Assembly: GCF_037042905.1 (NCBI RefSeq)
Contig: NC_087255.1
Coordinates: forward strand, 22,010,001-22,074,000
Source of the DNA: Lytechinus pictus
Taxonomy: Eukaryota
Direction of reading: 5' to 3'
Length of the DNA: 64,000 nucleotides
The first letter of the stretch is position 1; every line of letters starts with the position of its first letter. The notes under the pieces are model-generated. The model was not told where the DNA came from. It saw nothing but the letters and a program-made list of their open reading frames with translations, and did no database searches. A program made the position numbers and the translations under genes. This document shows, one piece after another, positions 21,101 through 41,338 of the stretch.

Positions 21101-24100
21101 CTATGAATCAAAAGTGCTGAATATTCTTTGAAATTAAATGATCCTGTAAAAAAAGAAAGGACAATCCAATGTTGTAAGAATGATTGATAGATTTGAGGGG
21201 CGTCCTTTTCAAGCCTTTGTGCTTATGACTGTTCCCTCCCATGCAATGATTGTTTATTGTTATTTTACCATGAGATATTGTCAATATATTTTTCTGTTGT
21301 ACGATTTATTTTTGCATGGAAATAAAGAATCAATCAATCAATCAATTTGTTCAATTTGAAAAAAAGTGTATTGGGTATATTATCAGCACGCGAATCGATT
21401 TACTCATCACTGCTCATTGAGTGTACGTGGACAATAAGAGATCAACGACATACACATCTTGGAATTGTCTTCACTCTAAAACAATATTTGGGGAAAATGC
21501 TCCGTGAGGGTAATTATGTGTCCAACCAACATTGCGCATTTCTTTTGGGCATTTTTATATATCAAGTGTGATGAAGATTCGGCCCATTCTAACGTTATTA
21601 CTGCTTATTTTTTAACCTTACTGCACAATATGCTTCCCACATTGGGTGAAATACTGCCCAAAATTGGTTGGACACATAATTACCCTCGTTCTGGTTAAAA
21701 TTTTACCCAATATGTTTTTACAGTGTTGAACGCGTTTGGGATCTGCAGCTGGCGAACTCCGTTTACGCGTATTCCTATATCCTCTGAGGGAGGGCGCTAT
21801 GAGATTATTGCGTCACAGACAAGGGTTTATATTCTTGGAATAATTTGTTCTTTCTCCCACAGTATCACAGCTACCCTTGCTAGTGTCGGGGCAGCAGGCG
21901 TGCCACAAGCCGGTCTCGTAACCTTAGTAATCGTCCTCAACGCAGTGGGTCTACCAGCCGATGACATCACTCTTATCCTCGTCATTGATTGGTTTCTGTA
22001 AGTGACGTCATTTCGATTTATATTCTCCTTTGTGTGCATTAGGTAGAAATAATCAAAACAAAAATCTTAAACTTTGGATGGTGTCTTTTGCTTTCAGAAT
22101 TCAGATGAATCAGATATTTGTAAGAGTGTTTTATTTTACATTATTGTTTAACAGAAACATTTTAAATAACTTATACACTTGTTCGTTTTTATTGTGATGC
22201 TGATATGGATCCTTAACAACCAAAATATGAGTTCAAATCAAATTATCAAACAGATTCTGTATAAAAAAAAATGTGCCTGCTCAATTTACCAATAACCACT
22301 TTAATTGGGATACCGCTCCCTCTACTTCAGTTATTCGATCCCTTGGTTCGTTTTAAAGTCCCTTGTCTCCTTATGTATGAATGTAATTGATTTGAAATAA
22401 AATATTGGGAAAGTTAAGTTACACATTAAAGGTTCTGAGTCATGCAACTATATTTTGCTCTTATTAGTTTTCAATTGTTTTTCTAAGAATTTTAACATTA
22501 TTAATATGATTTATTTATCTAGGATTAATAAGATATTGCTGGTTTTAGAAGTTAATTTCATAGTTTCTCACGCTCATAAGCCCCGCCTCCAGAAAAAGAT
22601 CGAAAACTCTCGAGCTCGCTAGTCACGTGACTATACGTCATCAAGGGAATCTGGCAGCTCTGCAAACTCGATCATCGCGCACGTAAAAAGTTTTCGTCTA
22701 TTATGTTTACGTATTGTAGCGCTGTATTGTTGAGAAAGTTTACCGAGTTCTTTTTGGAAAAGTTTTGTACATTTGTGATATTTGCGATAATATCAAGATG
22801 CCGGCGAGATGCATCGTCGGAGGTTGCAGCAACACTACGAAGGATGGTGCCAGCTTGCATTTGTTTCCCAAAGATGCAAATTTACGCAGAATATGGGTCT
22901 CGAAAGTGAAGTTGACCCGAGCAAATTGGAGCGGCCCCAGTGACTGGAGCGTGGTGTGCAGTAGCCACTTCGAAGATGCGGATTTTGATGACGGGTTGCA
23001 TGCTGCTTTTGGCATGAAGAGGACCCGGCGGCTGAAGCCCGACGCTGTGCCTAAAATAAAGAGTGGGTCATCAATGCAAGTAAAGAGGAGTGGGTCACGG
23101 ACAGCAGCGGACAAACGAAAGAAAATGAGGGTGAGCATATTATCTATTAGTAATAGACTTTGTTTAAAGTTTATCTTTGCAATTGTTGTGGTCAGTCAGT
23201 TCAAGTTCAACGACGGAAAGTGTGAGGATCACGTCAATTTCCTTATTTTATTTATTTTTTATTTTGAAGGTGTTTATGATGGTGGGCCCCAAGTCTGCGC
23301 ATCAAACAATTTGAGTTTAGATTAACATGAATTTCTTCTTATTATTTATTAACAAAATCTTTCCGTTAATAATGTTCCTTATATTATTATTAGTATTTTA
23401 GTAATTGTACTAAATTTCTCATTAAAAAAATGAAAGAAAATAGGCCTATAGGATTTTCTTGGAAAAACCTCGTAGGCCTACTGTAATTTTCAGATTTGTC
23501 AAAAAATGGTAGGCCTACCCCGAGCCCATGTCTGCGCACTCAATCTTTGCACACGATTCGGGGATTTTGATGAGAAAGGCTGCATTTTGATGCCGTCACA
23601 TGAAATGCCCTAAATCCATCATTTTGAGTCAGATTTTTTTTTAAATACCTGTCAGCCTGTAGACCTAGGCTATGGCTAGGTATTGCATGTGTAGAGCTCG
23701 TGCTCGTTGCGTATCTTCTTTTACTAGAATTGCGCTGATACGCGTGTGCGTAGACTTGGGGGAACTTGCCATAGGATACGCCTCGAAAATAAAAAAGGAA
23801 ATTGAAGTGATCCTCAAACTTTCCTCAAGAGTCCAGGCTCCACATTCATGACATTGGAAACAGGTCTACGAATTCTAAATTTCTGTTGCGAATTAGAAAT
23901 CCTATTAATTGTGAGTTGTATTTCAAGACAGGATCTACATTGTAGTACGTGGCTAGTGCTGTGAAGAGGTACAGTAGGCCCAACGTTAGGTCTAAAAGTT
24001 TTCTTGTTTCAGTTGTTTGTGCCATTGTGGTTCATTTCTCAAGTAAGGAAATATACAAACTCTTTTGGGGGTATGGTGGCTCTAGTGGTAAAGCGCCTGC

Positions 24101-27100
24101 CTCATGAACGGGAGGTCTTGGGTTCGATACCCGACCGAGTCATTAAAAAAGGGACCTCCTGCCTTACTAAAATACTAGGCACTCAGCATTTAGATTGGAG
24201 AAGGATAATAATTACAATTACATTCAGGTATTAATTATTATGTTATGCAGGGCCCGGTGGTAGAACAGTTTCCTAACTGAAGTGGCTACCCTGGGAATTA
24301 AAACGTTAGATTATTTTTACCTTTTTTTTAAAAAGCCAAAAAGTTTTTTTTTTTATTCCAGATCCAGATTCCAGGCCTAATATCATATTGTATATTGTCT
24401 CATTTTTATGTTTTGTAATGTTTCTTTGTCTTGATTTTGTATATTTTAATGGAAAAGAAATGAATTCAATTCAGTGTTTGTTTTACAAAGTCATGAGAAG
24501 GGTAAACAAATCTGCATGAAAGGAACCTTCTAAACAACATGATATTATAAGTTTGGACAAAATTGTTCATGCAATAATATACAGAGTTAAAAGATTCACA
24601 ATAATGATTGTAGAAATAGTTTATACCATGGAGCTATACATGTAGATCTATATTTTTTAGAAGAAATTTTTTTTGATAGAAATAAAATTTTTTTAAAGAG
24701 TGTACAGAAATAATGAAAATGGGATGAACTATTGGGCTCTATAAGAATTGATTTGGATATACAATAAGGCATGAAAATTATCTTTGTGATAGCAAATACA
24801 ACATAACTGAATTGATTTAATAATTACAATACAGGGATTAATGTAGAGATACAATGTGCAAAATATAATTAAATTAAGTTATTTGGTTGAATGAGATATA
24901 AATACAATGAAACATCTCAATTGTCATGGTTGAAGATACAGTGGAATGAATGAATTGACAATTTTATTTGAAAAAAAAACGAATTTGTATTTTTGATTAT
25001 TTTCGTGGTATTACATTTTTATACTTGATAAGTCAGAAAGTCTGCCTAAAGATGCAATAATGCAAGTATTGTACTCCGGGAAATAAGTTTTAAAATGTCC
25101 CCAAAGTATTACATATAGATCATTTTGTCTTTTGACATTACTTAATTTGCATATTAATATAGATAGCCCTCAATAATAAAATGTTAGAGCGTTAGAGGTT
25201 CCATGTCCCACCAATGTTTAATTTCTCACTTTTTTTATTTTCTATGATTTTTAATAATTGTAATAAATACTTAATGCTCATTTTACCAATTAAGCAAATT
25301 AGGTGCTCCAATTTGCATAAATATGCATACATCTAATTTCTCGTACTGAAAATTTAAAATGTAATATTTGGACTTTCTTATCCCACCAATGATTACTCCA
25401 TACAATGCATATATGAAATTATGTAGGGTGACTTTGCAACAGTTTGTACTCACTGCCATACATCATAAAGTAGGTAGTGAAATCTAACTGAGGTCTGAAT
25501 GAAAAATAGATCTGAAGGAAGATGATTTCTAATTCCATTCAATTCAATCATGGTTTATTTCATATTAAAAAAAATACATGTTACACAGCCCAAACTTAAG
25601 GCTGAAATTAGCATGTTAATATGTTATTAATTCCTTAAGTTTATTATTTTAGAAATAAGAACACATGGCTATTGTGTATATTTTTCTCTCATTTTTTATT
25701 TAAATTATTCTCACAGATGCTGGATGAATTGCTGTCAACATCTGTTGAAGCTAGGGATGCTGAGGAGCAAGGGTCAGCAGTGGAGCCTGCATCAATGGAA
25801 AGTCCATCAGACACTGATGAGCCAGGATGCAGCCAATGGACAGATGAACATTCATCTGAGTCTGAAGAATCCTTTGATGAACAGGTATAAATTTGTTTTC
25901 AAATTGTGCACCCCCTCCCCGTGAAAAGACATGAAAGCAAACAAACATAAAAGGTAATTTAGCAGCAAATAAGGGATAATATTGAGTAAATTATCAACCA
26001 CAATGAATTTAGCAGAATTTAGGATACATGTAAATTATATTGACATTTTTTTCTTTCCAAAGAAACCAAAACCTTTATGCATGTGATTCAAACAAGACAT
26101 ATGGTTCATGAAAAACTCATAATACTTGTCTTCCAAGTCTTAACATACCTGGCTGTGACTGAAATTACAGTTTATCCCAAAATTGATTCAGGTGTAGTTT
26201 TGATTAGTATTTGTGCTGGAAACCATACTTTATTTATGTATATAATTTTTTTGCATGTCACTGGTAGTGGTATGTACATGTATTCAGCATATTTTGGCTA
26301 CTGTATTGATATCCAATTAACAGCCGTTCAAAGATCCAGCTATGGAATTTCAGCAGCATGGCCATACAACCTCTGTTGGGATACAGGTCTCTGTAGCAAC
26401 AAGAGTTAAACGTAAGTTTATTTTTCATCTGTTTATCTATATTGTCAATTTTCCTTTTGAGGCTGGTGCTGCTAAGTTGTGGAAAGTTTTTGTAAACATA
26501 TGCTCTAGATAATATATTTATTGAGGCTATAAATATTGAATTACTGATATTCATTCCCAATCTGACAGAATCAGTGTCATGTAGTTTAATTAACTTGGCT
26601 ATGATAGTCATGAACATCTATAGCTATTATACATTTACATTTAATAGAATACTGCATCATTCTGTGTTCCTTGTATATTTTTGGATACTTGCAAGCGATT
26701 TTGCTGATTTGCATATGCGCAGTACCAAAACCATTAACAGGAGTCATGCTCAGTATGTCACATATTATTCACAATGTTGCTAGAAAGATAAGTTACGGGT
26801 ACCAATTTGAAGGTGTAAATGTTGCAATTCCACTTGAAGAATAAGTCCTACGCAGTAGTCCGGGCCACAGATAACTTACACCCTGGATTGCAGATATGTT
26901 GTGTTCCCCTATGTCTGAAAATTTGTTTCACAACCAAAGTAAAAGTAAAATATACATGGACATTTTCAGGGTCCCAAAGGGTTGTACTTCTGCAGAACAC
27001 AGGTTCACAGATACCACCCGATATTCCAGCCTTTATTTCAAGAGGGACCTCTTTTGACAAAGGGGATATACCAGAAGAGAAAGTTGATGCGAAGGAAGCG

Positions 27101-30100
27101 GAGGAAGAAAGGTTATCATCTCCAGAAAGTGACGCCGCAGAACCCTCCTCACCTGGATACAAACCACCATCATCTTCATCTTCATCATCAGATGAGCGTG
27201 TTATTGCCAAGCCACAAAAAAGACAGAGAAAACGGTTAGTTCTTTCATTATCCTGTTCAAAATCAATACTAGTACTGTAAATTCTTTTGAGAAAAACCTC
27301 AGACACATATCATAGTGATTTAATAAATAAAGCATTTTAGATAATTTTTCTTATATATTACAGCAACAGCAGGCTGATGAAATTCTTACATCGTCTTTTA
27401 GGATTTTTTTTGTATTTCTAAACAATTTTATTTTTTGTCTTTTATTTCAAATACAGGAAAAGGCGATCAAGCAAAAAGGCCACATGGGAAGCCCCAGCCC
27501 AAGGTATTCCTCCACACAAGGAAAAAAAATACATTGTATACGAGTCTAAGCTTTTGGAGCTGTTGCAGTTTTGCCCATCCTGCAAGTCTGCAAATGTGTC
27601 CCTTGTAAAGAGGGAAGTTGGAAGCCTCCTTTCTGTGACAAGGGAGTGCCTGTCTTGTGACCAGAAGTCGACAACATGGGAGAGCCAGCCATGGATAGGC
27701 CCCTATCCTGCTGGCAACCTCCAGCTGTCAGCGGCAATCCTGTTTGCTGGCGGGAGCCCCAGTGAGTCGCTGCGAGTGCTGAAGCATTTTAACGTAGCAA
27801 CGCACACACGCAGGACTTTCTTCCGACACCAGCAGAAAGTTTTGCATCCAGCTATCACCAATCAATGGCAGAAGCAACAGAACCATCTGCTCACTGAACT
27901 GTGTGAACGGGGTCTGCCACTCACCATTGGGGGAGATGGGAGAGCGGACAGTCCAGGACATTCTGCAAAGTTTGGGGTATACACTGCCCTAGAATTGAAT
28001 GTCAACAAGATTGTTGATTTTCAGCTGGTTCAGGTGGGTCTGATTTTCTGTCCTTAGTTCATGTTCCCATGATACATATGACCACAAGTGCCTAGTTTTA
28101 TTTCATGAAATAGAAAGTAAATATAAAGAATCTGCATTTTTGCCAAGACGGGTTAAGTTGAAACACAATTCCTCTTGTCTTGGTTACTTATTATATTCAT
28201 GTCTGCCAATTTAAATTGATTAAATTTAAAGGCTATTTTGATGTTCCAGCCCCAAACTGTTATTTCATGTTATCACTATTGTGTGTTATGCAATGTTGAT
28301 TTATATTTTGTATTTTGTTTTTTCATAGAGTAATGAGGTGAAGGGTTCGTACCACATGGAGTTGGAAGGTTTCAAGAGAGTTGTCAACTTTCTTGATGAC
28401 AAGGGACTAGTAATCAGGAAGTTGGTAACGGACCGACATAGACAACTTGCCAAATACATCAGAATCACACTTCCACACATTATTCATGTGTATGATGTCT
28501 GGCATGTATCCAAAGGTGAGTAATTATCATACATTTGTGTCTTGCAAAATATATTTAAAATGAAATATTAATTCGACTTGTTTATGATTAAATATTTAGT
28601 GCTTAAACTCCTGGTCCTAAGCAAAAGCAACTATACACTGCTAGAATGCTGCAAGTACTCAGAAAACAATGTGAGTTTTATCTAATTTAATTGCTTACCA
28701 AGTGAGTTTTTTGCTTTACAAGCACTCAAATTAGCGAGCTTCAAAAAACAGCAGTATCTCACTTGTCAAAGGCCTGAATTCTGTGATGTCATTTCATGTG
28801 AAGCGAGTAGTGATTTAGTCCAAAAATTAATGCTTCTATTTCACATTCCATCTCCTTGTTTCTCTTTTGCATCATGCTTGCATTTGGTTTTTCATATAAA
28901 TACGTGAGGCAGTTATCTATGATAAACATTTCGCATGATGTCATCAATTAAGGCATTTTTGTTGTTTTTGTTTTTAGTTTTGGTATATTTTTTATTACCT
29001 ATATTAGGTGTTGGAAAGAAGGTGCATGCCTTGGCGAAGCAAAAGGATTGTGAAGAACTTGTGCAATGGGAACCAAGCATCACCAACCACATGTATTGGG
29101 TGGCTGCAACTTGTGAAGAGGATGAAGACGATCTGAGGGTGGCCAAGTGGAAGTCTCTTATGAACCACATCCAAGGGATCCATGAAGGTCATTCTGAAGT
29201 CTTTCCCAAGTGTCTTCATGGTGACTTGCAAGCTCAAGGTCGCAAGAAAAAATGGCTCACACCAGGTAAATTCATGAATAAGATTCATTTGTTTAATGTT
29301 AGATCTGTATCATATGAAACAAGAAAAATCAAACCTTATGAATATTGTATTTTCCTTACCTACCAATACCATTCATTATCAATTTATGCCATTACTCTCA
29401 TAAAGTATGTTGATTCAATTTTATTGCATTTTTTCCATTTTGAAAACTGTAATTATGACGTTACCTGCTCATTAAGCATGATACACTGGTTACCTAAGGC
29501 AACAATTGTTTAATGATTCCGCTCCTTTTGTATCCATTTTTCAGGCACAAAAGTCTGTGAAAAACTAACAGGTATCGTGCAAAGCACCATGTTGTTGAAC
29601 GATGTGAAAAAGTTGTCTGGAGACCAACAGACATCTTCCCTGGAGTCATATCACAGTCTGGTGAACCGGTATGCGCCCAAGCTGAAGTCCTATTCGTATG
29701 AAGGAATGACTAGCAGGTAAATGCACTATATATTCTATGAGAAGAGTTACATTGGACCATGTTTCTTTATTTAGCATACACACAAAATAATGTGGGTAAT
29801 TCCAAGCAAAAGTGGATATTTATAGGACTCTATTAAAAAGGGTAGATCTAATGTTTGGATTAAAACCCATATGGAATAATGCAAATGGTTTTATAACCCC
29901 CCCCCCCAAAAAAAGTCTGACAGATAGTAAGAGGCAGTGGCGTACCTAGGATTTTCCACAGGGGGGGGGGGGGGGCAAAATCGGCCGCCAAAAAAAAAAA
30001 AAAAAAAAGGTCTTCAATAAAAAATAAAAGGTTATTGTACCAGAAAAAAAAAAGAAAAAAAAGGTCTTCAATGAAAAATAAAAGGTTATTGTACCAGAAA

Positions 30101-33100
30101 AAAAGAAAGAAAAAAAAGGTCTTCAATAAAAAATAAAGGTTATTGAAAAAAAATTGAAAAAGCAAAAAAAAAAAAAAAAGGTCTTCAAGCTCGTCAGGGG
30201 GGGCAATAAAGGTATTCAAGTTCGTCAGGGGGGGGGGGGCATAAAAGGTCTTTCAAGCTCGTCAGGGGGGGGGGGCAGTGATATGTATTTTGTATGGGTT
30301 GTTGCTCGTCCCCCCCGTAGGTACGCTAGTGGTAAGAGGCCACATTCATTTTATAAAATTAAAATTCAAGCATTAGTTTGAATAAACTTAACTTTGGTAT
30401 TTCGTGATCATTCCATGTGGTATGGGTATCAAATGAAAGAGCAGACAGTTTTATGTTTAAAATTCAGATAGCCCTGATAAGTGACTTTTTGGTATCCTTT
30501 CTTTGAACTGTTTTTCTTGTGCAAGAATGAAAAATCTTCTGAGTTAAACCGGGTGAAAAATAAAAGCAATTTGCATGTTGCATTGTGTTTACGCACTGTA
30601 TTAGACATGCTTTTACTATGTGCATTTATTTTCTGGTTATCATTCAGGCTCAGACTTGCTGCTATGGACTTCAATGAAAATGGCAACCGACAGCAGGCAA
30701 AAACGTTGAAAGGGGACAAGCGGTACATGGTCAGCAAACCAAAGTACAAGCCAGGGAAGGCATCAGTGAAAGCTGTTAAGGAAGCAAAAACATTCAGTGA
30801 GTTTATTTTGTTCTGTGTGTTATCGACTATAGGTTCATCATCATATCAGAAACATATTATGAAAAAGGATGATTCCATGGCAATGATTCATTACTAGAGT
30901 AACATCAGTTAAATCCTACTTTTCTCATGTGTTATGTTGATCACTATAACTGTTCTCAACAATATAATCTATAAAGATTAAAGAGCTTTTTTTTTTCCTT
31001 GATGCCCATTGGTGGTACATTTTATAGCATACTAACATGGCATAAGAAAAACACTGGTAAATCAATACCATCCAACATATTTGTATATCCATTAGCTGGT
31101 CTAGCTGACCTGTACATGTTGAACCTCACTTTTTAACCTTTTTGTATCTCAGAATTTGTTGATGATCTGATGGATGAGGTCAGACGATTGTGCACAGGAT
31201 CATCTCAACTGCCAGAGAGGAAGGAAGCCCCGCCATCTTTATGCAGTGAATATACCTTTCCTCCCAAGGAGGAACTTGTTCAGGATCACCGAAGTCGTTT
31301 TAATTAAAATAAGCGAACTGTAAACCCTATCATGCTAATATCGTATACAGCTTCATGATAAATTGGAACGAATGAAAGATTGAACACATAAGTTCATTTA
31401 AGAGAAAATTTAGTTACTCTATTGAAGAAAAGATTCCTTATGATTAAACATGCCATTTTCATCTGATGAACTATATTTTTTAGCGAATTTTATATGAAGA
31501 CATACATCTCTGATGTACATGTAGTTGTACAAATAACATTGTGAAGGCAAAACAGATGACTGAGCAATTTGATACCTTTGCTTCAAAATTATTAAACAAA
31601 AAGAATCATATCTATTATGGAATTATATTTGTTTAAGTTTTGTTCAACAGTAAAGTCGACCACATACTTGTGAGTGATCAGTTACATAATTTTAAGGAAA
31701 TATTGTTGGGAAAGATTTGTTCAACAGTAACACATGTACAATTCTTCTTTGCAAGGAGTTTTGTTAGAAATACTATTCATTTGAAACGTTGGTCAATGAT
31801 TATCATGATGAGTTGTGGTTCAAAATCTCTCATGCTGGCCGGTTACGACCACTGTAGCTCCAACAGTGGTTTCCAAAAGAAAACTTTCATGGTCTATACA
31901 ATTTCGGAATACTAGTAACTGCAATAATTGTATAAAATTTTGAAGATTTAAGAGCATTATCAGAATGTTTTCTCTACTGTGTTATTTGCATGTAATAAGT
32001 AGATATTTCTTTACATAAATGTGATTGTATTTATAAATGTAGATGAAGTAGTTGAAGTACATTTGATATGCATGTCAAAGTATTTCACGTTTTAGCCAGC
32101 TGAATTTGATGACTCGGATATGTGTCGTGTAGCTTAAAAAAAATCTTGCATGACCTGAAGCAACGGCTACTAAAATCAGAAAACATTTTTTTAAAGCATT
32201 TTTACAAGCAACTCTGTAAGAAGTTATATAGCATGTATTACATAGATATTTCTTTGTATGAATGTTATTGTGTTTATAAATGTAGGTGAAGTGGTAGAAA
32301 TACATTTGAAATGCATTTCAAAGTGTTCCATGTTTTAAACAGCTGAATTTGATGATTCAGGTAGCTTCCAAAATCTTCCCTGATGTAACATCTACTAAAA
32401 TTGGAAAACATTTTTTTCCCCCCAATTTTTTCAAGCATTTGTACAAGCAACTCTGTAAACTACCTCCATGGTTATACTTATCTTGACCCATTCAGGACAG
32501 GAATTAATTAACAACTAAAGTGATCACATTTCGTTCCTCAAATGGGCAACAGCAATATTTATTTTAATGCTACATGCTTCCAATTGAATGTGATGTCTTT
32601 GAAACCAACATACATGGTTTGGAACTTGGATAATATTTTTTAAACGCCAATTTCGATGAAAAACTCTGGTCTTCAATTCTTCCAATGTGTTGCCAATTTG
32701 AGGAGTTTAAAGATTATCCTCATAAAATTCCTGGCAGTATGGTCACTCAACAATGAGTGCAATGTATGCATAGTTTTTTTTTCTCTCTTTTACTAATGTA
32801 CCTGGTGTAATTTTTAGAGCTCTGAAACAAAAATGATTTACCTTAACCACTTAAGGTCGATTGTCCTGAACGAGTTAAGCCATAACATGTCTATTGACCA
32901 GCTTATATTTATTCATATTTATGTCTCTTGCACTCATTTCTACTTGCAAATCAATGCTTCTCTGAGAATATAATAGTTTGCAGGATTTTTTAACAAAAAA
33001 AAAAGCATTCTGTCTCTTGTCTTTCTACAGCTACTGCATAGTTTATGGTAATACAGTCCACTACCATTATATGTGCACTGGAAGGACGCTCTTGTTGCAA

Positions 33101-36100
33101 TGCTCCAAATGTCTAAACTGTGCATTGGCATATTTTTTATGCAAGTATAAAGTGTAAAATCAATGCCGCATTTATTTAGAGGTAATTGATTTGGCCTGGA
33201 AAGTCTTATTATAATGGGAGTGGACTATTGTAATTTTAGACTGAATATTGTTGACAACCATAAAGGATTTTTATATGTAGGTTTTAAAAATGAGATCACC
33301 GAGACTGTACATTGCAAGTTGGCAATTTGGAAAGTAAATTATAACAAGTGGTAGGGACAACTTTCCAATGGGCTGTATACTCAGTTCTCAGGGAATTGTG
33401 TATTACCCATAAGTAGGGCCCCCTCCCGGTAGTACTTGAAATATCAGCATCTTTTATGTTCCTGAGCAAAAATACCATATATAATTTTAAGTAAAAATGT
33501 GAATAAAAATAACTTTTTATGCAATACACATTTGTGTATATTGGGCAAATGGAAAATATTCCCTCCATCAAGATGACAGCATCAATACGGTGAAGCCTCC
33601 ATGATAGTTAATGGTATACAAATTACAAATTTTTACAACTTTCAGAAATTCATAACTTTCTTGTTACTCCGATATAATACACTTTCACCTATTGTATTAT
33701 TTTTCTTTCCCCTCTTTTAACAACTTTTTATCTTGGTTGGATTCCTCTTTACATGCACTCTTGCCCCTTGGGCCTGTTTCATAAAGAGTAACAACAGTTG
33801 GTAGTTTTGTCATTATGGCAACTACCATGGTAACCTTGATTTTGATTGGCTGCTGAGCAATGTTACCATGGTAATTTCCATAATGGCAAAGTTACAACAG
33901 TCACAGTTCTTTATGAAACGGGCCCCAGATTCCACTATCGCTCTTTTGTCCCTCTTTCACATGTTCTCCACTTCCATCAAATCTACATTGTACAATGCTC
34001 TTACCTCTGAATTTAAATACAGATAACTCTGCCTAAGTCTACCTTATATTCATCTAAGTCAAAGCAATTTTGCAACATTCAATCATTCATCTATCATCCA
34101 ACATTTCCTAGCCTGTAGTCTTGCCCGGGGCTACTGCCATTGTCTTTTGCGTTCAACTGTTAACAGTGGGCTACAAAGTAGCACAGCCTATACACTCCGG
34201 TCCTGCATTAATAGTTGCCGTTGTTTATCAACAACAGACAACACATAATTTTAGTATGAAACTTCCACACCTATTTGTTGACCATAATTTAAAAAAATTG
34301 ACCAACGCTAACTGTAGTATAAGCTGTGGGCTGCAAATCGTTGTTTGTTTACATTAACAGTTGGCAGCAAAAGACAATAGCACCAGCCGCTGCCTAGATT
34401 ATAGGCCAAACATACCCAAAATGTTTGGTTTCATTAGTTCACTCTTGTTATAATGATAATCAGATAAAGTAATTTATAATGACAGGCAGTTTTCCAGTAC
34501 CAATTTCATATGTACTGCATGAGTGCTGCCATAAATATTAAGATTATAACAGAAGTGGACTGTAGTAAGACTGCCTAAACTGACTTTGGAAAAGAACGCA
34601 AGAAAATTAAGTTGGTTTGAACACCTTTATTTAAAGAAAACAGAAATAAATACAATCAGCACTTCCCTGTTATTTCATCAAAACATACAATAATAAAACA
34701 ACTCTGAGTGCTTGTCTTTAGCACAGTGATAAAAACATCAGAATCTTTATGACTTTTTATCAGTCAAAAATGTGACAAAAAGAAATTTTCTTCTACACAC
34801 CAGGTATACTTGGCAAAAAATTTCTTTCAAATTACATGTACTTCTAGTTGAGAGATCACAAAATAATGGCACTCGATAAAATGTTTAAGACTTAAGTACA
34901 TCCAGTCCTTGTCATGGAATCAATCATGTATGTCTCTGTTGATTCAGAGGCGCCTTCATTGAAATCAACATAAAAAAGGTCTACGCATCTTCAAAACCTC
35001 TGTAAATGTCCGATGGATAAGTAGCTCGGATGTGAGTCACCGCACAGGAAGGTAGGGGGACGCGCACAGATCTCCCTAGAAATCCCCAACACCATCTTGC
35101 GAGCTGCCGATAGCCAACGTGCCTGTGTTTCCTACAAAAAATAAATAGAAATTAAAAATAAGTAAATCAGATACAGAACATCACATGATTTCTAAATCTA
35201 CATCATTAAAATTTCCCCTAAATCCTACTGACTACCATTAGCGGCGGAAGTCAAAAAATCTAGGGGGATTACCAACATTTTTTGACAAGCAACCCCCCCC
35301 CCCCCAATAAAAAAAGTTATCAACCAAAATTTTAGGGGGGGGGGACAAGAAAATCTTTTGACAAGCAAAAAAAAGGTGATCAAATAAAAATTTAGGGGGG
35401 ATCGTCCCCCCACCTCAAATTTAGGGGGTGGGGACACGTTCCCTCCCCCCCCCCCGCCTATGCTGACTACTACATGTGCATATATTTTAGGTGATTCATA
35501 AGTAAGGAGGGGGTTGTAGTTAACACCTCTGAGTCAAAAAAGAATAAAATTGAAGACTGCTAATGGAAATAACCATTCAAAAATATATATCACCGTAGCT
35601 CATTACAACACTTACCTTATGTCTTATGATACATATTTTCATAATTTTAAATGATATAAAACATGATACCATTCAGGACAATTGAGTATTTTGAGTTGAT
35701 AAAAATCATGTTTTTTTTTATAATTTTTTTCTTATTCCAATATTAGATTGCAGAAAATAAGTGCAATTGTTCATGAAAAAACACTCACTCATTTTCAGTT
35801 GCATCATGCCGTGCTCTGTCACCATATTGCTGACGATACCCTAAGTATGCAGTGTCTAAAACCCACGGATTTAAACAAACCCCTTCAAAGCCAGGGTGCT
35901 CTGTGATGCAGTTCAGTTCTGCAGCAGTGTACTGGTCCATCATCGCCACTACCTGAGCCACTTCTTTGCAGCAGTACGACTCGACAACTCGAGGCATCGC
36001 TTGGCATCCTCCGCTGCATGAACACCTGCATGAACAACAGAAATTTGAAAAACAAAATGAAAACATTTATTAGACTGCAAGATACCAAGTGTTAGGTCAA

Positions 36101-37196
36101 GTAAAATGATTCCTAGTTCACTCCATCGAATTCGAAGCGCCTCAGCTCAGGTCAAAGCATCGGGCAGCAGCCACAGCTCAGATCCGTTCACCAGCCTCGT
36201 TTCGGCTTTTAATAGCAACGTAACTGAGCTGTGTTTCCAGCCGGAAGCGTCGGGTAGCAGCGGCTGCAGCGCACGCTAGTGCTCCGTCACTTCCAATCCG
36301 ACCTTCTCAGATGAGACATCTTTTTCAGACACTCAGGGTACTAGTTACGGAGTATTAATAATACGATTATGTATGAGATAATCTTACCAATTGTTGTTTC
36401 CAAGTCTACCCTCAATGTCATTTTCTTGGATGGCACCAACATTCTGAATTTCTTCCCCTGGTTGGAACTCGGGCTCGAATTGGTACGGCAAAATACCCGC
36501 TGCTTGCATGCCAGCAGGAATATCAGGACCGGCCTCTACTTGATTTTCTCTGGCAAATTCTTCTTCTTGCTCACTCTCTGAATTCGACCATGGAGAATCT
36601 TGATCAGATGACAAGTGGGCAGGATCATATTCACTCTCTGATCCTGAAAGATCACTCATGATTTGTGCTTGAATTTAAAATGTTTCGCGAGAACTTGTTG
36701 TGAAAATTCAATGGATACGCGCGCTTGGCCGAGCGATCCCACTGCTTGATATTCCCTTGATGACGTCACACAACGATTACGTAATCGGTAGACTTTTGAA
36801 CAATTTTAGTGGGCGTTCCCTAACCGTGGTCTTTTTCCTGATTTGTGTCGAATTGAGACAAAATTACGGGAAACAATTGCCAGATTCGTATTCAGCATGA
36901 AAAATTGCATATACTACATCATAATAAATTTTTTTGAGGTGACAATGTCAGAAAACCTTTAAAGCTACCATGTCCTTATTCGGCCTCTTTTCCACAGGGA
37001 CCGTGTCCGTACCACAGTCAACGTAGAGGGCGACTCGTTCGGTTGCGGCATAATTTACAAGTACACCAAACCTGACTTTGACCGCATCGACCAAGAGAAT
37101 ATGGAGAAAGCATTGACGAACGGTTACCACAACGAGAAGAAAACCCCCATTGATATGCTGGATGGTAACATCTCCGGAGACGACACACGCTTGTAA
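160..37196 (+). CDS. SLC1A: SLC1/EAAT-family Na+-dependent acidic amino-acid (glutamate/aspartate) transporter, paralog A, ~537 aa; exons 160-396, 1544-1791, 12170-12212, 15148-15470, 16397-16630, 20348-20542, 21863-21997, 36998-37196
   Basis: All introns are GT-AG with consistent phases (1614 nt total). Family motifs: [39 protein letters not shown] (HP1), [24 protein letters not shown] (TM7), [12 protein letters not shown] (HP2), [16 protein letters not shown] (TM8). The symbol is family level only; a specific vertebrate ortholog cannot be assigned. Confidence 0.93.
833..1054. mobile_element. Palindromic MITE
   Basis: GCACT...AAAACAAAT..GTCAAA..TGACTAG is mirrored by CTAGTCAATTTGACTAATTTGTTTTAAGAGTGC, with an internal inverted pair CAGCTGGGTGCAAC / GTTGCACCCAGCTG. 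Confidence 0.7.
1208..1525. mobile_element. MITE with 3-bp AAT TSD (PIF/Harbinger-like)
   Basis: TIR GGCCCGTATTCTGAAGTC..GTTTAA... at both ends, AAT on both flanks, second copy at ~5370-5620. Confidence 0.8.
2231..3110 (+). repeat. Exact 94-bp direct duplication (2231-2324 and 3017-3110)
   Basis: Identical AAGGTTATTATTG...GATTTCTTTCAAC. Confidence 0.9.
4422..4694. mobile_element. MITE
   Basis: TIR GGGCCCCGTCTTACAA..TTACGATTGATCCG / CGGATCAATCGTAACTCGTTGTAAGACGGGGTCC. Confidence 0.7.
5370..5620. mobile_element. Truncated second copy of the 1208-1525 MITE
   Basis: High identity to 1208-1430, followed by another TIR start (GGCTCGTATTCTGAAGTC) at ~5592. Confidence 0.75.
6057..10452. mobile_element. 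Non-autonomous TIR element hosting a nested foldback insertion
   Basis: 18-bp TIR CTGCACCATCCCGAGTTT (6057-6074) / AAACTCGGGATGGTGCAG (10435-10452). The palindrome AATCTCGAGATT or close variants repeats near both ends. No clear TSD. Confidence 0.65.
6143..9672. mobile_element. Foldback-like element with long inverted arms and an internal ~177-bp tandem array in head-to-head orientation
   Basis: TAGACGGGTCAATATA (6143) / TATATTGACCCGTCTA (9672). Arms 6176-6500 and 9330-9649 are near-identical inverted copies. About 10 forward units (AAGTTACAAGGACAGTCAGTGG...CAAGATGGC at ~6547, 6725, 6900, 7076, 7253, 7430, 7607, 7783, 7960, 8137) and about 6 reverse units (8380-9250). Confidence 0.85.
11402..11768 (-). 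pseudogene. Decayed fragment of an Ig-domain gene with a hydrophobic C-terminal tail, antisense within intron 2 of paralog A
   Basis: 11768-11576 encodes ...[25 protein letters not shown]... (Ig E/F/G strand pattern). After a TTTTCAG acceptor, 11541-11402 encodes ...[15 protein letters not shown]. The intervening 34-bp spacer starts with GA rather than GT. Confidence 0.55.
15893..16165. repeat. Interspersed repeat; other copies at ~16690-16930, 18782-19020 and 57950-58140
   Basis: Shared GTCGAAAAT.GGTGAATCAAAAC...CGGTTCACCAA.TTTCGACAAA...GGGCATTTTCAATA. Confidence 0.7.
17175..17410. repeat. CACAGTGTG-rich interspersed repeat, with an inverted copy at ~55000-55260
   Basis: CACAGTGTGTTCACATTGTAGAACACAATGT matches the reverse complement of ~55220-55251. 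Confidence 0.65.
19692..19991. mobile_element. G/C-tract MITE
   Basis: Ends CAGAAGCGGATCTAG / CTGGATCCGCCCCTG. Confidence 0.6.
22798..31307 (+). CDS. THAP-domain DDE transposase (Kolobok-type), ~783 aa; exons 22798-23130, 25717-25884, 26324-26411, 26970-27234, 27457-28033, 28329-28515, 29008-29265, 29545-29716, 30648-30796, 31153-31307
   Basis: N-terminal THAP C2CH (CIVGGC...W...CSSHF...LKPDAVP), an acidic/Ser linker, a basic NLS-like KRQRKRKRR and CxxC...CxxC. Catalytic-type motifs: [33 protein letters not shown]. The spliced ORF is uninterrupted (2352 nt). Exons 2-4 are less certain than 1 and 5-10. Confidence 0.85.
24068..24320 (+). mobile_element. tRNA-derived SINE in transposase intron 1
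   Basis: A-box-like GGTGGCTCTAGTGG and B box GGTTCGATACC, followed by a non-tRNA body and an AT-rich tail. Confidence 0.7.
29935..30331. mobile_element. hAT-like MITE nested in a transposase intron
   Basis: TIR CAGTGGCGTACCTA / TAGGTACGCTAGTG, perfect 8-bp TSD GTAAGAGG (29927-29934, 30332-30339), internal A-rich/G-tract repeats. Confidence 0.85.
33770..33927. mobile_element. MITE carrying X-box-like and CCAAT motifs
   Basis: TIR GGGCCTGTTTCATAAAGA / TCTTTATGAAACGGGCCC; relatives at ~4020-4161 and ~48500-48630. Confidence 0.7.
34981..36659 (-). CDS. Transposon accessory protein (KolX-like) resembling the P2X7 C-terminal ballast / nanor-like Cys-rich domain, ~219 aa; exons 36659-36388, 36025-35789, 35131-34981
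   Basis: The 660-nt spliced ORF has an acidic N-terminus with PYQFEP, then WCSCSGGC...ESYCC...[18 protein letters not shown]...[17 protein letters not shown]...LPSC...IRATYP...YRGF. This is colinear with the P2X7 tail (WCQCGSC, ELCC, CITTS, RHCAYR, LPSC, IRKEFP, YSGF). Confidence 0.85.
35236..35462. mobile_element. hAT-like MITE nested in an intron of the KolX-like gene
   Basis: 8-bp TSD CTGACTAC (35228-35235, 35463-35470); ends CAT..GCGG / CCGCCTATG. Confidence 0.75.
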
Positions 37197-39009: not shown

Positions 39010-40756
39010 TTAATAGCACAACTCAAAATGCTACTCTGGTGAAAAATCCCCCCCCCCCAAAAAAAAAAAAGTAATCTGAGGTTAATTTACACTTTGAAAT
39101 ATCCCACAATTTTAACATGATGCTGCTGCAATATTGTGAACTCTTATTTCTGTTATTACCAGATTAAGAATTCTTACCAAAAAAATTTGACACCGAGATC
39201 AATAAGGTGTCAAAATAATATCTAAATGTCGCCCTCATTTTCATTTAGATTTTGTTACGTATGTAATCGAACTATTTACAAGTCTGCTATATGCTTGGCA
39301 ACCAAGACATCTGAAAAATTCGTGCACTTCCTCATTGGTAAAACCTAAAACACATAAAGGAGTATATTTTTGGCAGGGGCGGACCCGGACCCGCAAGGGG
39401 AGAGGTAAATGCCCCTATGATCTAAAAATCATAGGAAAGGGAGCGATAGAGATTGAAAAGGAAAGGCAAAATATAGGTTTAGATATTTCAATACCACTTT
39501 GTATGATAAAATTGACCGTATTGCCCCTTAATCAAAATATCTTGGGACTGCCCCTTTTTTCGGGGGGGGGGGTTGGAGGGGGTTTTGTCATTTCAATCTG
39601 TAATTTCCTGGTTCTCTCTTCTCTTGGCAATACTCCTGTGCACAAGACTTGTAAACAGATTTTGAATGATCATTGAATAAAAAATTACTAAGGTCATCTC
39701 GGGAATGTGACGTCAAAAATCATAGTTCTTGTAAGCTTTGTACATATTAAAACCTTTGTAATATGTTTATACGTTTTTTTTCTATCCAATTAATGTAATT
39801 AATTATCATGATTGCTATCCTATGATATTACCCTCTCTATTGATTTGTAAGCCTTTGTGCAGGATTATGTTTTAAAGTTTAAGAGGGTTCATACTGAATA
39901 TTAATTATGTTATTATAATTACTCTACTGTATAATGAGCTTAGAAAGTATTAAGCGTTATTATAAATGGAACGATTATTTTCATTATTAAGTATGGATAA
40001 TTTTAAATGTCTGTATAAAAAGAAATGTTTTTGTTTTGTTATTATTGGCGTGGTTGTGGTTGTTAATTTGGGTGATGTTGTTGATGTTGTTGTTAATCTC
40101 CTAATGAGGTAGAATTGCTGACTCCCAGCAGAATATTGGTTGCCATCACAAGAACATCTCTATGAAATGAAAAGATCCTGGTCGAATCGTTACATAAAAT
40201 CAATATTTAACTGGAAAATAGATCAACATTGCACTTCATCAGTACGACAGTACACCAGACGGTGGCCTGTACTGTTTCCAGAAGAAGAAGAAGAAGAGTA
40301 CGGCGAAATACAATAATTTGAAAGGGAAAATATAACACAACACTACTGAATAAACAAACCGATGTTCAGCATGACCAAAATTGACATTTCATCTTTTCTC
40401 TTTGAAGTTTAAACACATTTAAATGTAGGACGAAGTTCACCAGTATCACGAATGCTGCACAAATAAGCGATATTTCAAACTTTTCATCGTGTCAATATAT
40501 GCATTTACACACAAAAAATAGGAGTCTTTTCCCCCGCCTGCAAAACGAAATTTAGTATGCAATCAAACGAATGGCCAATATTTCATTCCCCCTCCAAATT
40601 GTGCTCAATTCAAATAGATATACATAATTCAAACAGCATGAACTGGAGATAGTTTCTTCATTGACATTCAACAATCTTTACGGGAATACAAAAAATGGTT
40701 GAGACTAGCGAAAAATAACTCCTAGATATACATAAAAGTAGACGAAAGAGCATTAA

Positions 40757-41338
40757 AGGGGAATCCAACCCAAATAAAAATTTGTTTTTATAAGGAAAAG
40801 AAAAATCAGACGAGTTGATAGGTGAAAGTTTGAACAATATTGGACAAACGACAAGAAAGTTATGAATTTTTAAAAGTTGTAAATATTGGTAATCACTATA
40901 CCCATGGAGACTTCAAATTGGCCGCATATGGGATGTCATAGTGATGTATGGCAAGGACTACTCTTCCATGTACTCCAATACATACTATGGCTAAAATTTT
41001 ATTTTTCCCAAAAAGTTTTATTTCAAATTATATTGTTATTTCATGAAGACATGAAACAATATACTACCTTGGTTATAATTAGATTACTGCCCCAGGGGAA
41101 TGGGTACTTAGGAGAAAACCACAAATCCCTGATAATAAAGTAAAGTTGTCCTTGCCCCTTGTCATAATTTACTGACCCAGTTGCCAATTTGAAATCTACA
41201 TAGTATTAGTGATCTCAATTTTAATGCAGCTATAACTTTCTTATTGCTTGTCCGATTTCTTTCAAACTTTCACCATTCTGTTTTATTTATTTATTTCCTT
41301 CCCAACACAACATTTTATGGCCAAGGCTGGATTCCCCT
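40757..41338. mobile_element. Non-autonomous Kolobok-like MITE
   Basis: TTAA|AGGGGAATCCA...TGGATTCCCCT|TTAA. Confidence 0.85.

What the first reader, a model, noticed from the sequence alone, without database searches (positions are those of the whole stretch)
34981..36659. Transposon-borne stand-alone P2X7 'ballast' (Zn/GDP-binding-like) protein
Seen: the Cys clusters (CxCxxxC, CC, C-IT, LPSC) and the RHxxYR...IR basic residues are colinear with the vertebrate P2X7 cytoplasmic tail, with no channel domain attached. Known: the P2X7 ballast binds a dinuclear Zn centre and guanosine nucleotide, and THAP-containing P-element transposase uses GTP through its own domain. Inference: this protein could be a separate guanine-nucleotide-binding cofactor of transposition, and such elements a plausible donor of the P2X7 ballast. 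The KolX-ballast resemblance may already be reported; the function is, to my knowledge, unresolved.
Basis: partly seen in the sequence, partly recalled or inferred. Interest (0 to 1): 0.75.

Follow-up and report, generated by a model that had tools for sequence, protein, structure and literature searches.

The report
KolX ballast gene of Kolobok transposon
This small sea-urchin gene is the known "KolX" partner gene of a Kolobok cut-and-paste transposon; it folds like the zinc-binding tail of the P2X7 receptor, a link published in 2022, and what it does for the transposon is still untested.

Summary
A three-exon, minus-strand gene at 34981-36659 encodes a 219-aa protein, and RNA data confirm both introns. 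The protein has an acidic, probably disordered N-terminus and a C-terminal P2X7 "ballast" domain, with no channel part.

All seven zinc cysteines are present. So are the counterparts of three of the five rat GDP contacts (R546, H547, R578). The other two (R574, K583) are V and S here.

- **Similarity to P2X7:** a profile of relatives hits only P2X7 among solved structures (E 2.7e-11). A model of the closest relative (64% identical) matches only P2X7 (Z 10.3-11.6; next best 2.3).
- **Location:** the gene lies inside a 14,529-bp Kolobok element (22430-36958). The element has TTAA duplications, AG...CT ends and a THAP-DDE transposase gene facing KolX. Six of seven relatives examined in other animals have the same facing layout.

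The KolX-ballast link and the idea that KolX gave rise to the P2X7 tail were published by Kojima and Bao in 2022. The scan had already noted this family on other DNA of this genome. The guanine-nucleotide cofactor idea is neither supported nor excluded.

This is an ordinary new member of a known kind.

The parts
22426..22429 (.). Left TTAA target-site duplication
   Evidence: TTAA lies directly outside the left terminus.
22430..22443 (+). Left terminus of the Kolobok element (AGGTTCTGAGTCAT); a short, imperfect terminal inverted repeat
   Evidence: It matches the reverse complement of the right end at 15 of 20 positions. It starts with AG, which fits the 5'-RR rule.
22635..22650 (+). 16-bp motif ACGTCATCAAGGGAAT, about 150 bp upstream of the transposase ATG
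   Evidence: It is a perfect inverted copy of 36751-36766.
22798..29720 (+). Multi-exon THAP-DDE transposase gene. The recognisable open pieces are 22798-23100 (THAP), 27554-28057, 28338-28523 (contains DVWH), 29001-29270 and 29577-29720. The true 3' end was not mapped.
   Evidence: The THAP domain scores E 6.2e-17 in Pfam, and the DDE pieces give weak MULE/Mutator hits. The pieces are 44-58% identical to transposase genes beside KolX relatives in six other loci.
34837..34980 (-). At least 144 nt of KolX 3' untranslated region
   Evidence: The spliced transcript contig reaches 34837.
34981..35131 (-). KolX exon 3 with its stop codon. It holds the R173-H174..Y177-R178, LPSC199 and I204-R205 motifs.
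   Evidence: Pfam P2RX7_C, E 2.3e-6. The acceptor site is confirmed by the contig joint at 35130/35788.
35789..36025 (-). KolX exon 2. It holds CxCxxxC, CC, C-I-T, and the KolX-specific H134 and C141.
   Evidence: 880 relatives at E <= 1e-3 in the representative search. Both junctions are confirmed.
36388..36659 (-). KolX exon 1: the ATG, an acidic tail and the PYQFEP motif (residues 58-63)
   Evidence: The donor site is confirmed by 6 reads and a contig.
36751..36766 (-). Second copy of the 16-bp motif, 92 bp upstream of the KolX ATG
   Evidence: Stranded KolX-sense read cover ends in the 36675-36781 bin.
36945..36958 (-). Right terminus of the element (reverse complement AGGTTTTCTGACAT)
36959..36962 (.). 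Right TTAA target-site duplication
21998..36997 (+). Last intron of the host SLC1-type transporter gene, which holds the whole element
   Evidence: The donor GTAAGT follows ..DWFL at 21997, and the acceptor CAG at 36995-36997 precedes [12 protein letters not shown].

Best explanation
The gene is KolX, the accessory gene of a two-gene Kolobok DNA transposon of the Kol0 lineage. The element is 14,529 bp (22430-36958) and is inserted at a TTAA in the last intron of a sea-urchin SLC1-type transporter gene.

Shown here: the gene is intact, transcribed and spliced. It encodes an acidic N-terminal tail, disordered in the relative's model, that carries a conserved PYxFEP motif. This is followed by a roughly 130-residue ballast-fold domain with all seven cysteines that hold the two zinc ions in P2X7. 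The gene faces a THAP-DDE transposase gene inside the same terminal repeats, and this layout recurs in echinoderms, a fish and an oyster.

Inferred: KolX is kept because the element needs it, most likely as a zinc-stabilised accessory subunit or regulator of the transposase (about 0.6). Its tail motif would dock onto the transposase or a host factor, and the conserved arginine-rich surface (R173, R178, R182, R193, R205) would bind a phosphate-bearing ligand. That the ligand is GDP or GTP, as in P2X7, is possible but unproven (about 0.25-0.3).
For: - **Gene model and splicing:**
- **Family:** Pfam P2RX7_C on exon 3, and PF20478 on nearly all relatives listed.
- **Profile against solved structures:** only P2X7 is hit, E 2.7e-11, over residues 472-594.
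- **Fold:** a model of the 64%-identical relative P0172 has domain pLDDT of about 90. Foldseek's top 14 matches are all P2X7 and the next has E > 1. VIA-align gives Z 10.3-11.6 against a next best of 2.3.
- **Conservation:** the seven cysteines are 96-100% conserved, R173 98%, Y177 100%, R178 98%, R205 98%, and P58 and P63 of PYxFEP 100% and 97%.
- **Element ends:** TTAA|AGGTT... on both sides.
- **Independent check of the ends:** two Diadema setosum copies are 99.8% identical, and their identity begins exactly at TTAA|AGGTATAC, 784 bp upstream of KolX. KolX is therefore inside the mobile unit there too.
- **Partner gene:** a transposase homologue faces KolX in 6 of 7 loci from five other species, plus a separate Kolobok family (L001) from Lytechinus pictus, the species earlier scan notes name for this window.
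- **Literature:** Kojima and Bao 2022 define KolX and its ballast similarity. A soluble P2X7 ballast domain binds GDP on its own (Sander 2022, abstract).
Against: - No experiment shows that KolX acts in transposition. Only one held paper mentions it.
- Two of the five rat GDP contacts (R574, K583) are V201 and S210 here, and V and S are the commonest residues at those positions across the family. H547 is Tyr in 60% of relatives.
- The window's own protein could not be folded, because a spliced sequence has no reference; a 64% relative stood in for it.
- One relative, in amphioxus (L007), sits among host genes with no transposase within 10 kb.
- The terminal repeat is short and imperfect.
- Transposase expression and the completeness of its reading frame were not checked.
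Confidence: 0.8

Rival explanations
1. KolX is a brake or self-regulator of the element, or a shield against host silencing, rather than a positive cofactor. It would bind the transposase or a host protein through its PYxFEP tail and limit or time transposition. Any nucleotide binding would be irrelevant or lost.
For: The layout and conservation evidence is the same as for the best explanation, because it cannot tell activation from repression. Only part of the GDP site is kept. KolX RNA is present in rRNA-depleted total RNA.
Against: Nothing here argues against it directly. R173 and R205, the counterparts of P2X7 R546 and R578, are near-invariant, which suggests the pocket still matters.
Confidence: 0.25
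2. KolX is a passenger: a host ballast-domain gene captured once by a Kolobok ancestor and carried along without any role in transposition.
For: Ballast-domain proteins also occur away from transposases, as in amphioxus locus L007. Rump 2020 treated them as host genes with an ancestral linkage to two marker genes.
Against: The same facing gene pair and the same two intron positions persist across echinoderms and a fish, and the gene pair also in an oyster, while the proteins have diverged to about 40-60% identity. Key residues stay invariant. A useless passenger would be expected to decay or be lost.
Confidence: 0.1
3. The gene is a domesticated host gene that merely lies near a transposase remnant.
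For: About 5 kb of repeat-rich DNA separates the two genes.
Against: Both genes lie between matching TTAA|AGGT termini. The whole unit sits inside a host intron that would be only 467 bp without it. The two Diadema copies show that KolX moves together with the transposase.
Confidence: 0.02

Closest known systems
KolX protein of Kol0-lineage Kolobok transposons (Kojima and Bao 2022, Mob DNA 13:24)
   Same: A small second protein encoded beside the DDD/E transposase in a Kolobok element with TTAA duplications. Its C-terminal part resembles P2X7 residues 476-595 and carries seven conserved cysteines.
   Different: This is a sea-urchin family. The animal groups that paper lists for Kolobok, and for Kol0, do not include echinoderms. 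The PYxFEP tail motif, the invariant His134 and Cys141, and the conserved intron positions were not in the passages of the two papers read here.
Cytoplasmic ballast domain of vertebrate P2X7 (PDB 6u9v, 6u9w, 9e3m; Pfam PF20478)
   Same: The fold is the same: Z about 11, rmsd 3.6-3.8 A over about 120 residues, for a 64% relative. All seven zinc cysteines are kept, as are R546, H547, Y550, R551 and R578.
   Different: There is no P2X channel, no membrane segment and no palmitoylated anchor. About 13 extra residues form a helix between the CC pair and C-I-T. R574 and K583 are missing. A His and a Cys that P2X7 lacks are invariant. The gene has two introns, whereas the P2X7 ballast lies in a single exon (Rump 2020).
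nanor / nanor-like and other 'ZCD' proteins (Rump et al. 2020, Front Immunol 11:113)
   Same: Short stand-alone proteins with a C-terminal ballast domain. That paper also notes that R546-H547 and R578 are kept in sea urchin and acorn worm.
   Different: Those were treated as host genes. This one is inside a mobile element with its transposase.
GTP-binding domain of the P-element / THAP9 transposase
   Same: It is a guanine-nucleotide requirement in a cut-and-paste transposase that also begins with a THAP domain. According to the 2022 paper, both superfamilies carry the C/DxxH signature.
   Different: In the P element, GTP binding is a domain of the transposase itself and is unrelated in fold to the ballast. 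No P-element transposase Pfam domain was found in the Kolobok pieces scanned. This is an analogy only.

Membership tests
KolX (accessory protein of Kol0 Kolobok) | Encoded within a Kolobok element alongside the DDD/E transposase | tested here: met
   Both genes lie between the TTAA|AGGT termini at 22430 and 36958. Transposase homology is shown.
KolX (accessory protein of Kol0 Kolobok) | [quoted passage not shown] | tested here: met
   The family profile hits P2X7 residues 472-594 at E 2.7e-11. C92, C94, C98, C109, C110, C130 and C199 are present and 96-100% conserved.
Kolobok superfamily (the element) | TTAA target-site duplication | tested here: met
   TTAA at 22426-22429 and 36959-36962.
Kolobok superfamily (the element) | Termini 5'-RR ... 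YY-3' | tested here: met
   The element runs 5'-AG...CT-3'. Two Diadema copies end at the same AGGT next to TTAA.
Kolobok superfamily (the element) | [quoted passage not shown] | tested here: inconclusive
   A candidate DVWH is seen in the piece at 28338-28523, and the pieces are 44-58% identical to transposases next to KolX relatives. No reference Kolobok transposase was available to map the catalytic residues. Pfam gives only weak MULE/Mutator hits.
Pfam PF20478 P2RX7_C / ballast fold | Score above the family's gathering cut-off | tested here: met
   Exon 3 alone scores 28.1 bits against a cut-off of 23.5. Exon 2 alone gave no hit, and the full spliced protein could not be submitted.
Pfam PF20478 P2RX7_C / ballast fold | Three-dimensional fold of the P2X7 ballast | tested here: met
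   Tested on the 64%-identical relative P0172, not on the window protein itself. Foldseek's top 14 matches are all P2X7, and VIA-align gives Z 10.3-11.6 against a next best of 2.3.
Pfam PF20478 P2RX7_C / ballast fold | Dinuclear zinc site | not testable with these tools
   All seven ligand cysteines are present. Metal content needs a purified protein.
Guanine-nucleotide-binding ballast (as in rat P2X7) | GDP contacts R546, H547, R574, R578, K583 (listed in Rump 2020) | tested here: inconclusive
   R173, H174 and R205 are present. V201 and S210 replace R574 and K583. Across the family, R546 and R578 are 98% conserved, and H547 is Tyr in 60% and His in 38%.
P2X7 receptor | P2X channel domain with two membrane helices | tested here: not met
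   The protein is 219 aa. Exon 1 has no Pfam match and is acidic.
P-element-type GTP-dependent transposase | P-element/THAP9 catalytic and GTP-binding domains in the transposase | tested here: not met
   Only the THAP domain is shared. No P-element transposase family was hit in seven scanned pieces. The full transposase was not assembled.

The most novel reading that the evidence does not exclude
KolX is a trans-acting, zinc- and guanine-nucleotide-loaded switch subunit of the Kolobok transposition complex. It would dock through its conserved PYxFEP tail motif, doing in trans what the built-in GTP-binding domain does for the P-element transposase. The P2X7 tail would then be a fossil of that switch.
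Probability: 0.2. Interest if true: 0.65.

Novelty: new member of a known kind. Interest (0 to 1): 0.25.

Why it matters
If KolX really is a nucleotide-sensing partner of a transposase, two things follow. It would give the first function for a domain whose role in the human inflammatory receptor P2X7 is still unclear. It would also add a second, independent case of guanine-nucleotide control of cut-and-paste transposition.

As it stands, this locus is a clean, expressed and apparently complete two-gene Kolobok copy. It could serve as starting material for such tests, but it adds no new concept beyond the 2022 paper.

Tried and rejected
- **Single-exon searches:** phmmer against the PDB gave E 0.8 for exon 3 against P2X7 and no P2X7 hit for exon 2. 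Pfam gave nothing for exons 1 and 2. Only profile and fold comparisons are convincing.
- **Terminal repeats:** the generic inverted-repeat finder missed the short terminal repeats. An anchored scan found them.
- **The 16-bp inverted match (22635 / 36766):** I first took it for the terminal repeat. It lies about 200 bp inside both ends, so it is an internal motif.
- **Retrieving the window's exact protein:** two word searches, with P0137 and P0104, did not return it. A spliced protein has no reference, so the full protein was not submitted to Pfam, the folding tool or the exact-sequence look-ups. P0172, 64% identical, was used instead.
- **Transcript contig ending at 37027:** it ends 69 nt outside the element and looked like an outside start site. 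I rejected that reading. The end falls 30 nt past the host splice acceptor at 36997/36998, which is where a 31-mer assembly graph would be expected to branch (assuming 31-letter words, as in the run index). Stranded reads also stop inside the element.
- **McCarthy 2019:** the structure paper is not held. The GDP-contact residues were taken from Rump 2020 instead.
- **Literature:** one search was wasted because "nanor" matched "nanorods".
- **Not done:** a tree testing whether the P2X7 ballast nests within vertebrate KolX, because no P2X7 sequence was available by reference.

Full report
**What is there**

Exon 1 is 36659-36388, exon 2 is 36025-35789, and exon 3 is 35131-34984 followed by TAG. 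Both introns are GT..AG, and the product has 219 residues.

Public RNA data confirm the model. One 1173-nt contig in run X1 matches without a mismatch and has both introns removed: the joints are at 35130/35788 and 36023/36386, with CT..AC on the plus strand. Six stranded reads of run X21 cross the first junction in the sense expected for a minus-strand RNA. Sense cover in X21 stops in the 36675-36781 bin, so transcription most likely starts inside the element.

The contig's far end at 37027 is not a start site. It lies 30 nt beyond the host gene's splice acceptor (36997/36998), which is where a 31-mer assembly graph would be expected to branch.

**The protein**

Residues 1-90 are acidic (pI 4.05), have no Pfam match, and correspond to a low-confidence, unstructured stretch in the model of the closest relative.

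- Exon 3 alone passes Pfam's threshold for P2RX7_C (28.1 bits against 23.5).
- A scan of 1.84 billion representative proteins with exon 2 found 880 relatives at E <= 1e-3.
- The named relatives are "P2X purinoceptor 7-like" or uncharacterised proteins of echinoderms, hemichordates, molluscs, cnidarians, amphioxus and fish, and nearly all carry PF20478.
- The closest full-length relative is P0172 of Lytechinus pictus, 64% identical over 164 residues.
- A 49-sequence alignment (A2) used as a profile hits only P2X7 among 177,635 solved-structure sequences. The match is colinear over P2X7 residues 472-594, with E 2.7e-11.
- An AlphaFold model of P0172 built on that alignment has pLDDT of about 90 across the domain. 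By Foldseek it matches only P2X7 chains: the top 14 have E 2e-4 to 2e-3 and the next has E > 1. VIA-align gives Z 10.3-11.6, rmsd 3.6-3.8 A over 120-121 residues, with a next best of Z 2.3.

The window's own spliced protein has no reference and was therefore not folded. At 64% identity the fold assignment carries over.

**Residue conservation** (window numbering)

| Feature | Window residues | Conservation across relatives |
|---|---|---|
| Seven zinc cysteines | C92, C94, C98, C109, C110, C130, C199 | 96-100% |
| Counterpart of R546 | R173 | 98% |
| Counterpart of H547 | H174 | Tyr 60%, His 38% |
| Counterpart of R574 | V201 | Val 89% (not kept) |
| Counterpart of R578 | R205 | 98% |
| Counterpart of K583 | S210 | Ser 59% (not kept) |
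| Other near-invariant basic or polar residues | Y177, R178, Q179, R193 | 96-100% |
| Other conserved arginine | R182 | 87% |
| KolX-only residues (P2X7 has Ser and Val) | H134, C141 | 100%, 98% |
| N-terminal tail motif P-Y-x-F-E-P | residues 58-63 | P 100%, Y 87%, F 84%, E 89%, P 97% |

The five rat GDP contacts are those listed by Rump et al. 2020.

The zinc site is fully kept. The nucleotide pocket is only partly kept, although there is a conserved arginine-rich surface. Rump et al. called the N-terminal parts "without obvious homologs". The tail motif looks like a docking peptide.

**It is transposon-borne**

Upstream on the plus strand lies a multi-exon gene with a THAP domain (E 6.2e-17). 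It also has open pieces that are 44-58% identical to transposase genes found next to KolX relatives elsewhere.

An anchored scan found matching ends. On the left, TTAA (22426-22429) is followed by AGGTTCTGAGTCAT. On the right...ATGTCAGAAAACCT is followed by TTAA (36959-36962). This gives a 14,529-bp element with TTAA duplications and AG...CT termini, the Kolobok hallmarks quoted from Kojima and Bao.

Two checks are independent of this window.
- Seven loci encoding relatives were fetched. Six have a homologous transposase on the opposite strand, facing KolX, 1.5-8 kb from its end. These are L. pictus, Diadema setosum (two loci), the starfish Patiria miniata, the fish Entelurus aequoreus and the oyster Saccostrea echinata. 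Only the amphioxus locus has none.
- The two Diadema copies are on different chromosomes and are 99.8% identical over more than 12 kb. Their identity begins exactly at TTAA|AGGTATAC, 784 bp upstream of KolX. There KolX demonstrably travels with the element, and the terminus starts with the same AGGT.

The two KolX intron positions are also conserved. One lies just before the first cysteine cluster, the other just before the R-H/Y..A-Y-R-Q helix. This holds in the relatives from sea urchins, starfish, fish and amphioxus, and matches the window.

**Setting**

The element sits in the last intron of an SLC1-type transporter gene. The donor follows ..DWFL at 21997, and the acceptor at 36997 precedes [12 protein letters not shown]. 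Without the element the intron would be 467 bp. The right end of the element is only 39 nt from the 3' splice site.

**What is known**

Kojima and Bao (Mob DNA 2022; PMC9587614) named the Kol0 lineage and its second protein KolX. They showed its similarity to P2X7 residues 476-595 with seven conserved cysteines. They also argued that P2X7, and zebrafish nanor, arose by capture of KolX.

Rump et al. 2020 had described the stand-alone domains across animals. They asked whether these bind GDP, and noted that sea urchin and acorn worm keep R546-H547 and R578. Sander et al. 2022 showed that an isolated P2X7 ballast domain binds GDP. No other held paper mentions KolX.

The scan itself had already reported this family on other DNA of the same genome, with the same verdict. 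Those notes name Lytechinus pictus and four identical copies. I did not verify either point.

**How it most likely works**

Shown: this is an expressed, intact ballast-fold zinc protein. It is co-inherited with a THAP-DDE transposase in a fixed facing arrangement across phyla, with invariant cysteines and arginines.

Inferred: the element needs it as an accessory subunit or regulator (about 0.6). The disordered tail motif would be the docking site, and the arginine-rich face would bind a phosphate-bearing ligand. GDP or GTP is the obvious candidate by homology (about 0.25-0.3), but DNA or RNA is not excluded.

A braking or anti-silencing role fits the data equally well. A pure passenger role is unlikely, given how long the gene pair and its intron positions have persisted.

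The comparison with the P element's GTP requirement is an analogy. The two transposases share the THAP domain and, according to the 2022 paper, the C/DxxH signature, but no P-element domain was found here.

One caveat applies to the published donor scenario. KolX has a conserved intron inside the domain, whereas P2X7 encodes the whole ballast in exon 13. A simple exon capture would therefore also need an intron loss.

**Verdict**

This is a new member of a known kind.

Noticed in passing
window 21998-36997 (host intron); element end 36958; acceptor 36997: The 14.5-kb element fills what would otherwise be a 467-bp last intron of an SLC1-type transporter gene. It ends only 39 nt upstream of the 3' splice site, which is where a branch point would normally lie. 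The spliced host form was not observed directly.
   Followed up: partly
window 22635-22650 and 36751-36766: A perfect 16-bp inverted motif (ACGTCATCAAGGGAAT) lies about 200 bp inside each end, upstream of both genes. It could be a transposase-binding site or a shared promoter element. It was not found in the related loci of other species.
   Followed up: partly
KolX residues 58-63 (window 36470-36487, minus strand): A P-Y-x-F-E-P motif in the disordered acidic tail is conserved across echinoderm, hemichordate, mollusc, fish and amphioxus relatives (P 100% and 97%). It was not mentioned in the passages of the two papers read here.
   Followed up: partly
KolX residues H134 and C141 (exon 2): A histidine and a cysteine are invariant in KolX relatives (100% and 98%) but are Ser and Val in P2X7. 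They could be extra metal ligands or a KolX-specific site. The model coordinates could not be inspected.
   Followed up: no
L002:9217-21584 and L003:9217-22355 (Diadema setosum): Two copies of a related two-gene Kolobok lie on different chromosomes and are 99.8% identical, apart from one roughly 770-bp insertion or deletion. Both are bounded by TTAA|AGGTATAC. This suggests very recent mobility in that species.
   Followed up: partly
L007:10001-11650 (Branchiostoma lanceolatum): A KolX relative with the same intron positions sits among ordinary host genes (a methyltransferase and a VWA protein), with no transposase within 10 kb. It could be a domesticated copy or the remnant of a decayed element.
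   Followed up: no
window 33306-33751 and 40754-41200: A roughly 450-bp repeat occurs in inverted orientation (79-87% matching), once inside the Kolobok element and once outside it. It is probably a separate small repeat family nested in the element.
   Followed up: no
window 35225-35437 (KolX intron 2): This G/C-run-rich repeat attracts RNA reads of both orientations, with loose ends and strand-switch joints. The reads probably come from many other copies in the genome, not from KolX.
   Followed up: no
window 46169-46795: An open frame with a reverse-transcriptase-like FADD motif (a LINE-type fragment) lies next to a run of N at about 46990-47290. The N run was left untouched.
   Followed up: no
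one search run table (organism B): Runs of a second species hold 9-14% of the 31-mers of the KolX region. Near-identical parts of this element or gene therefore exist in another species.
   Followed up: no
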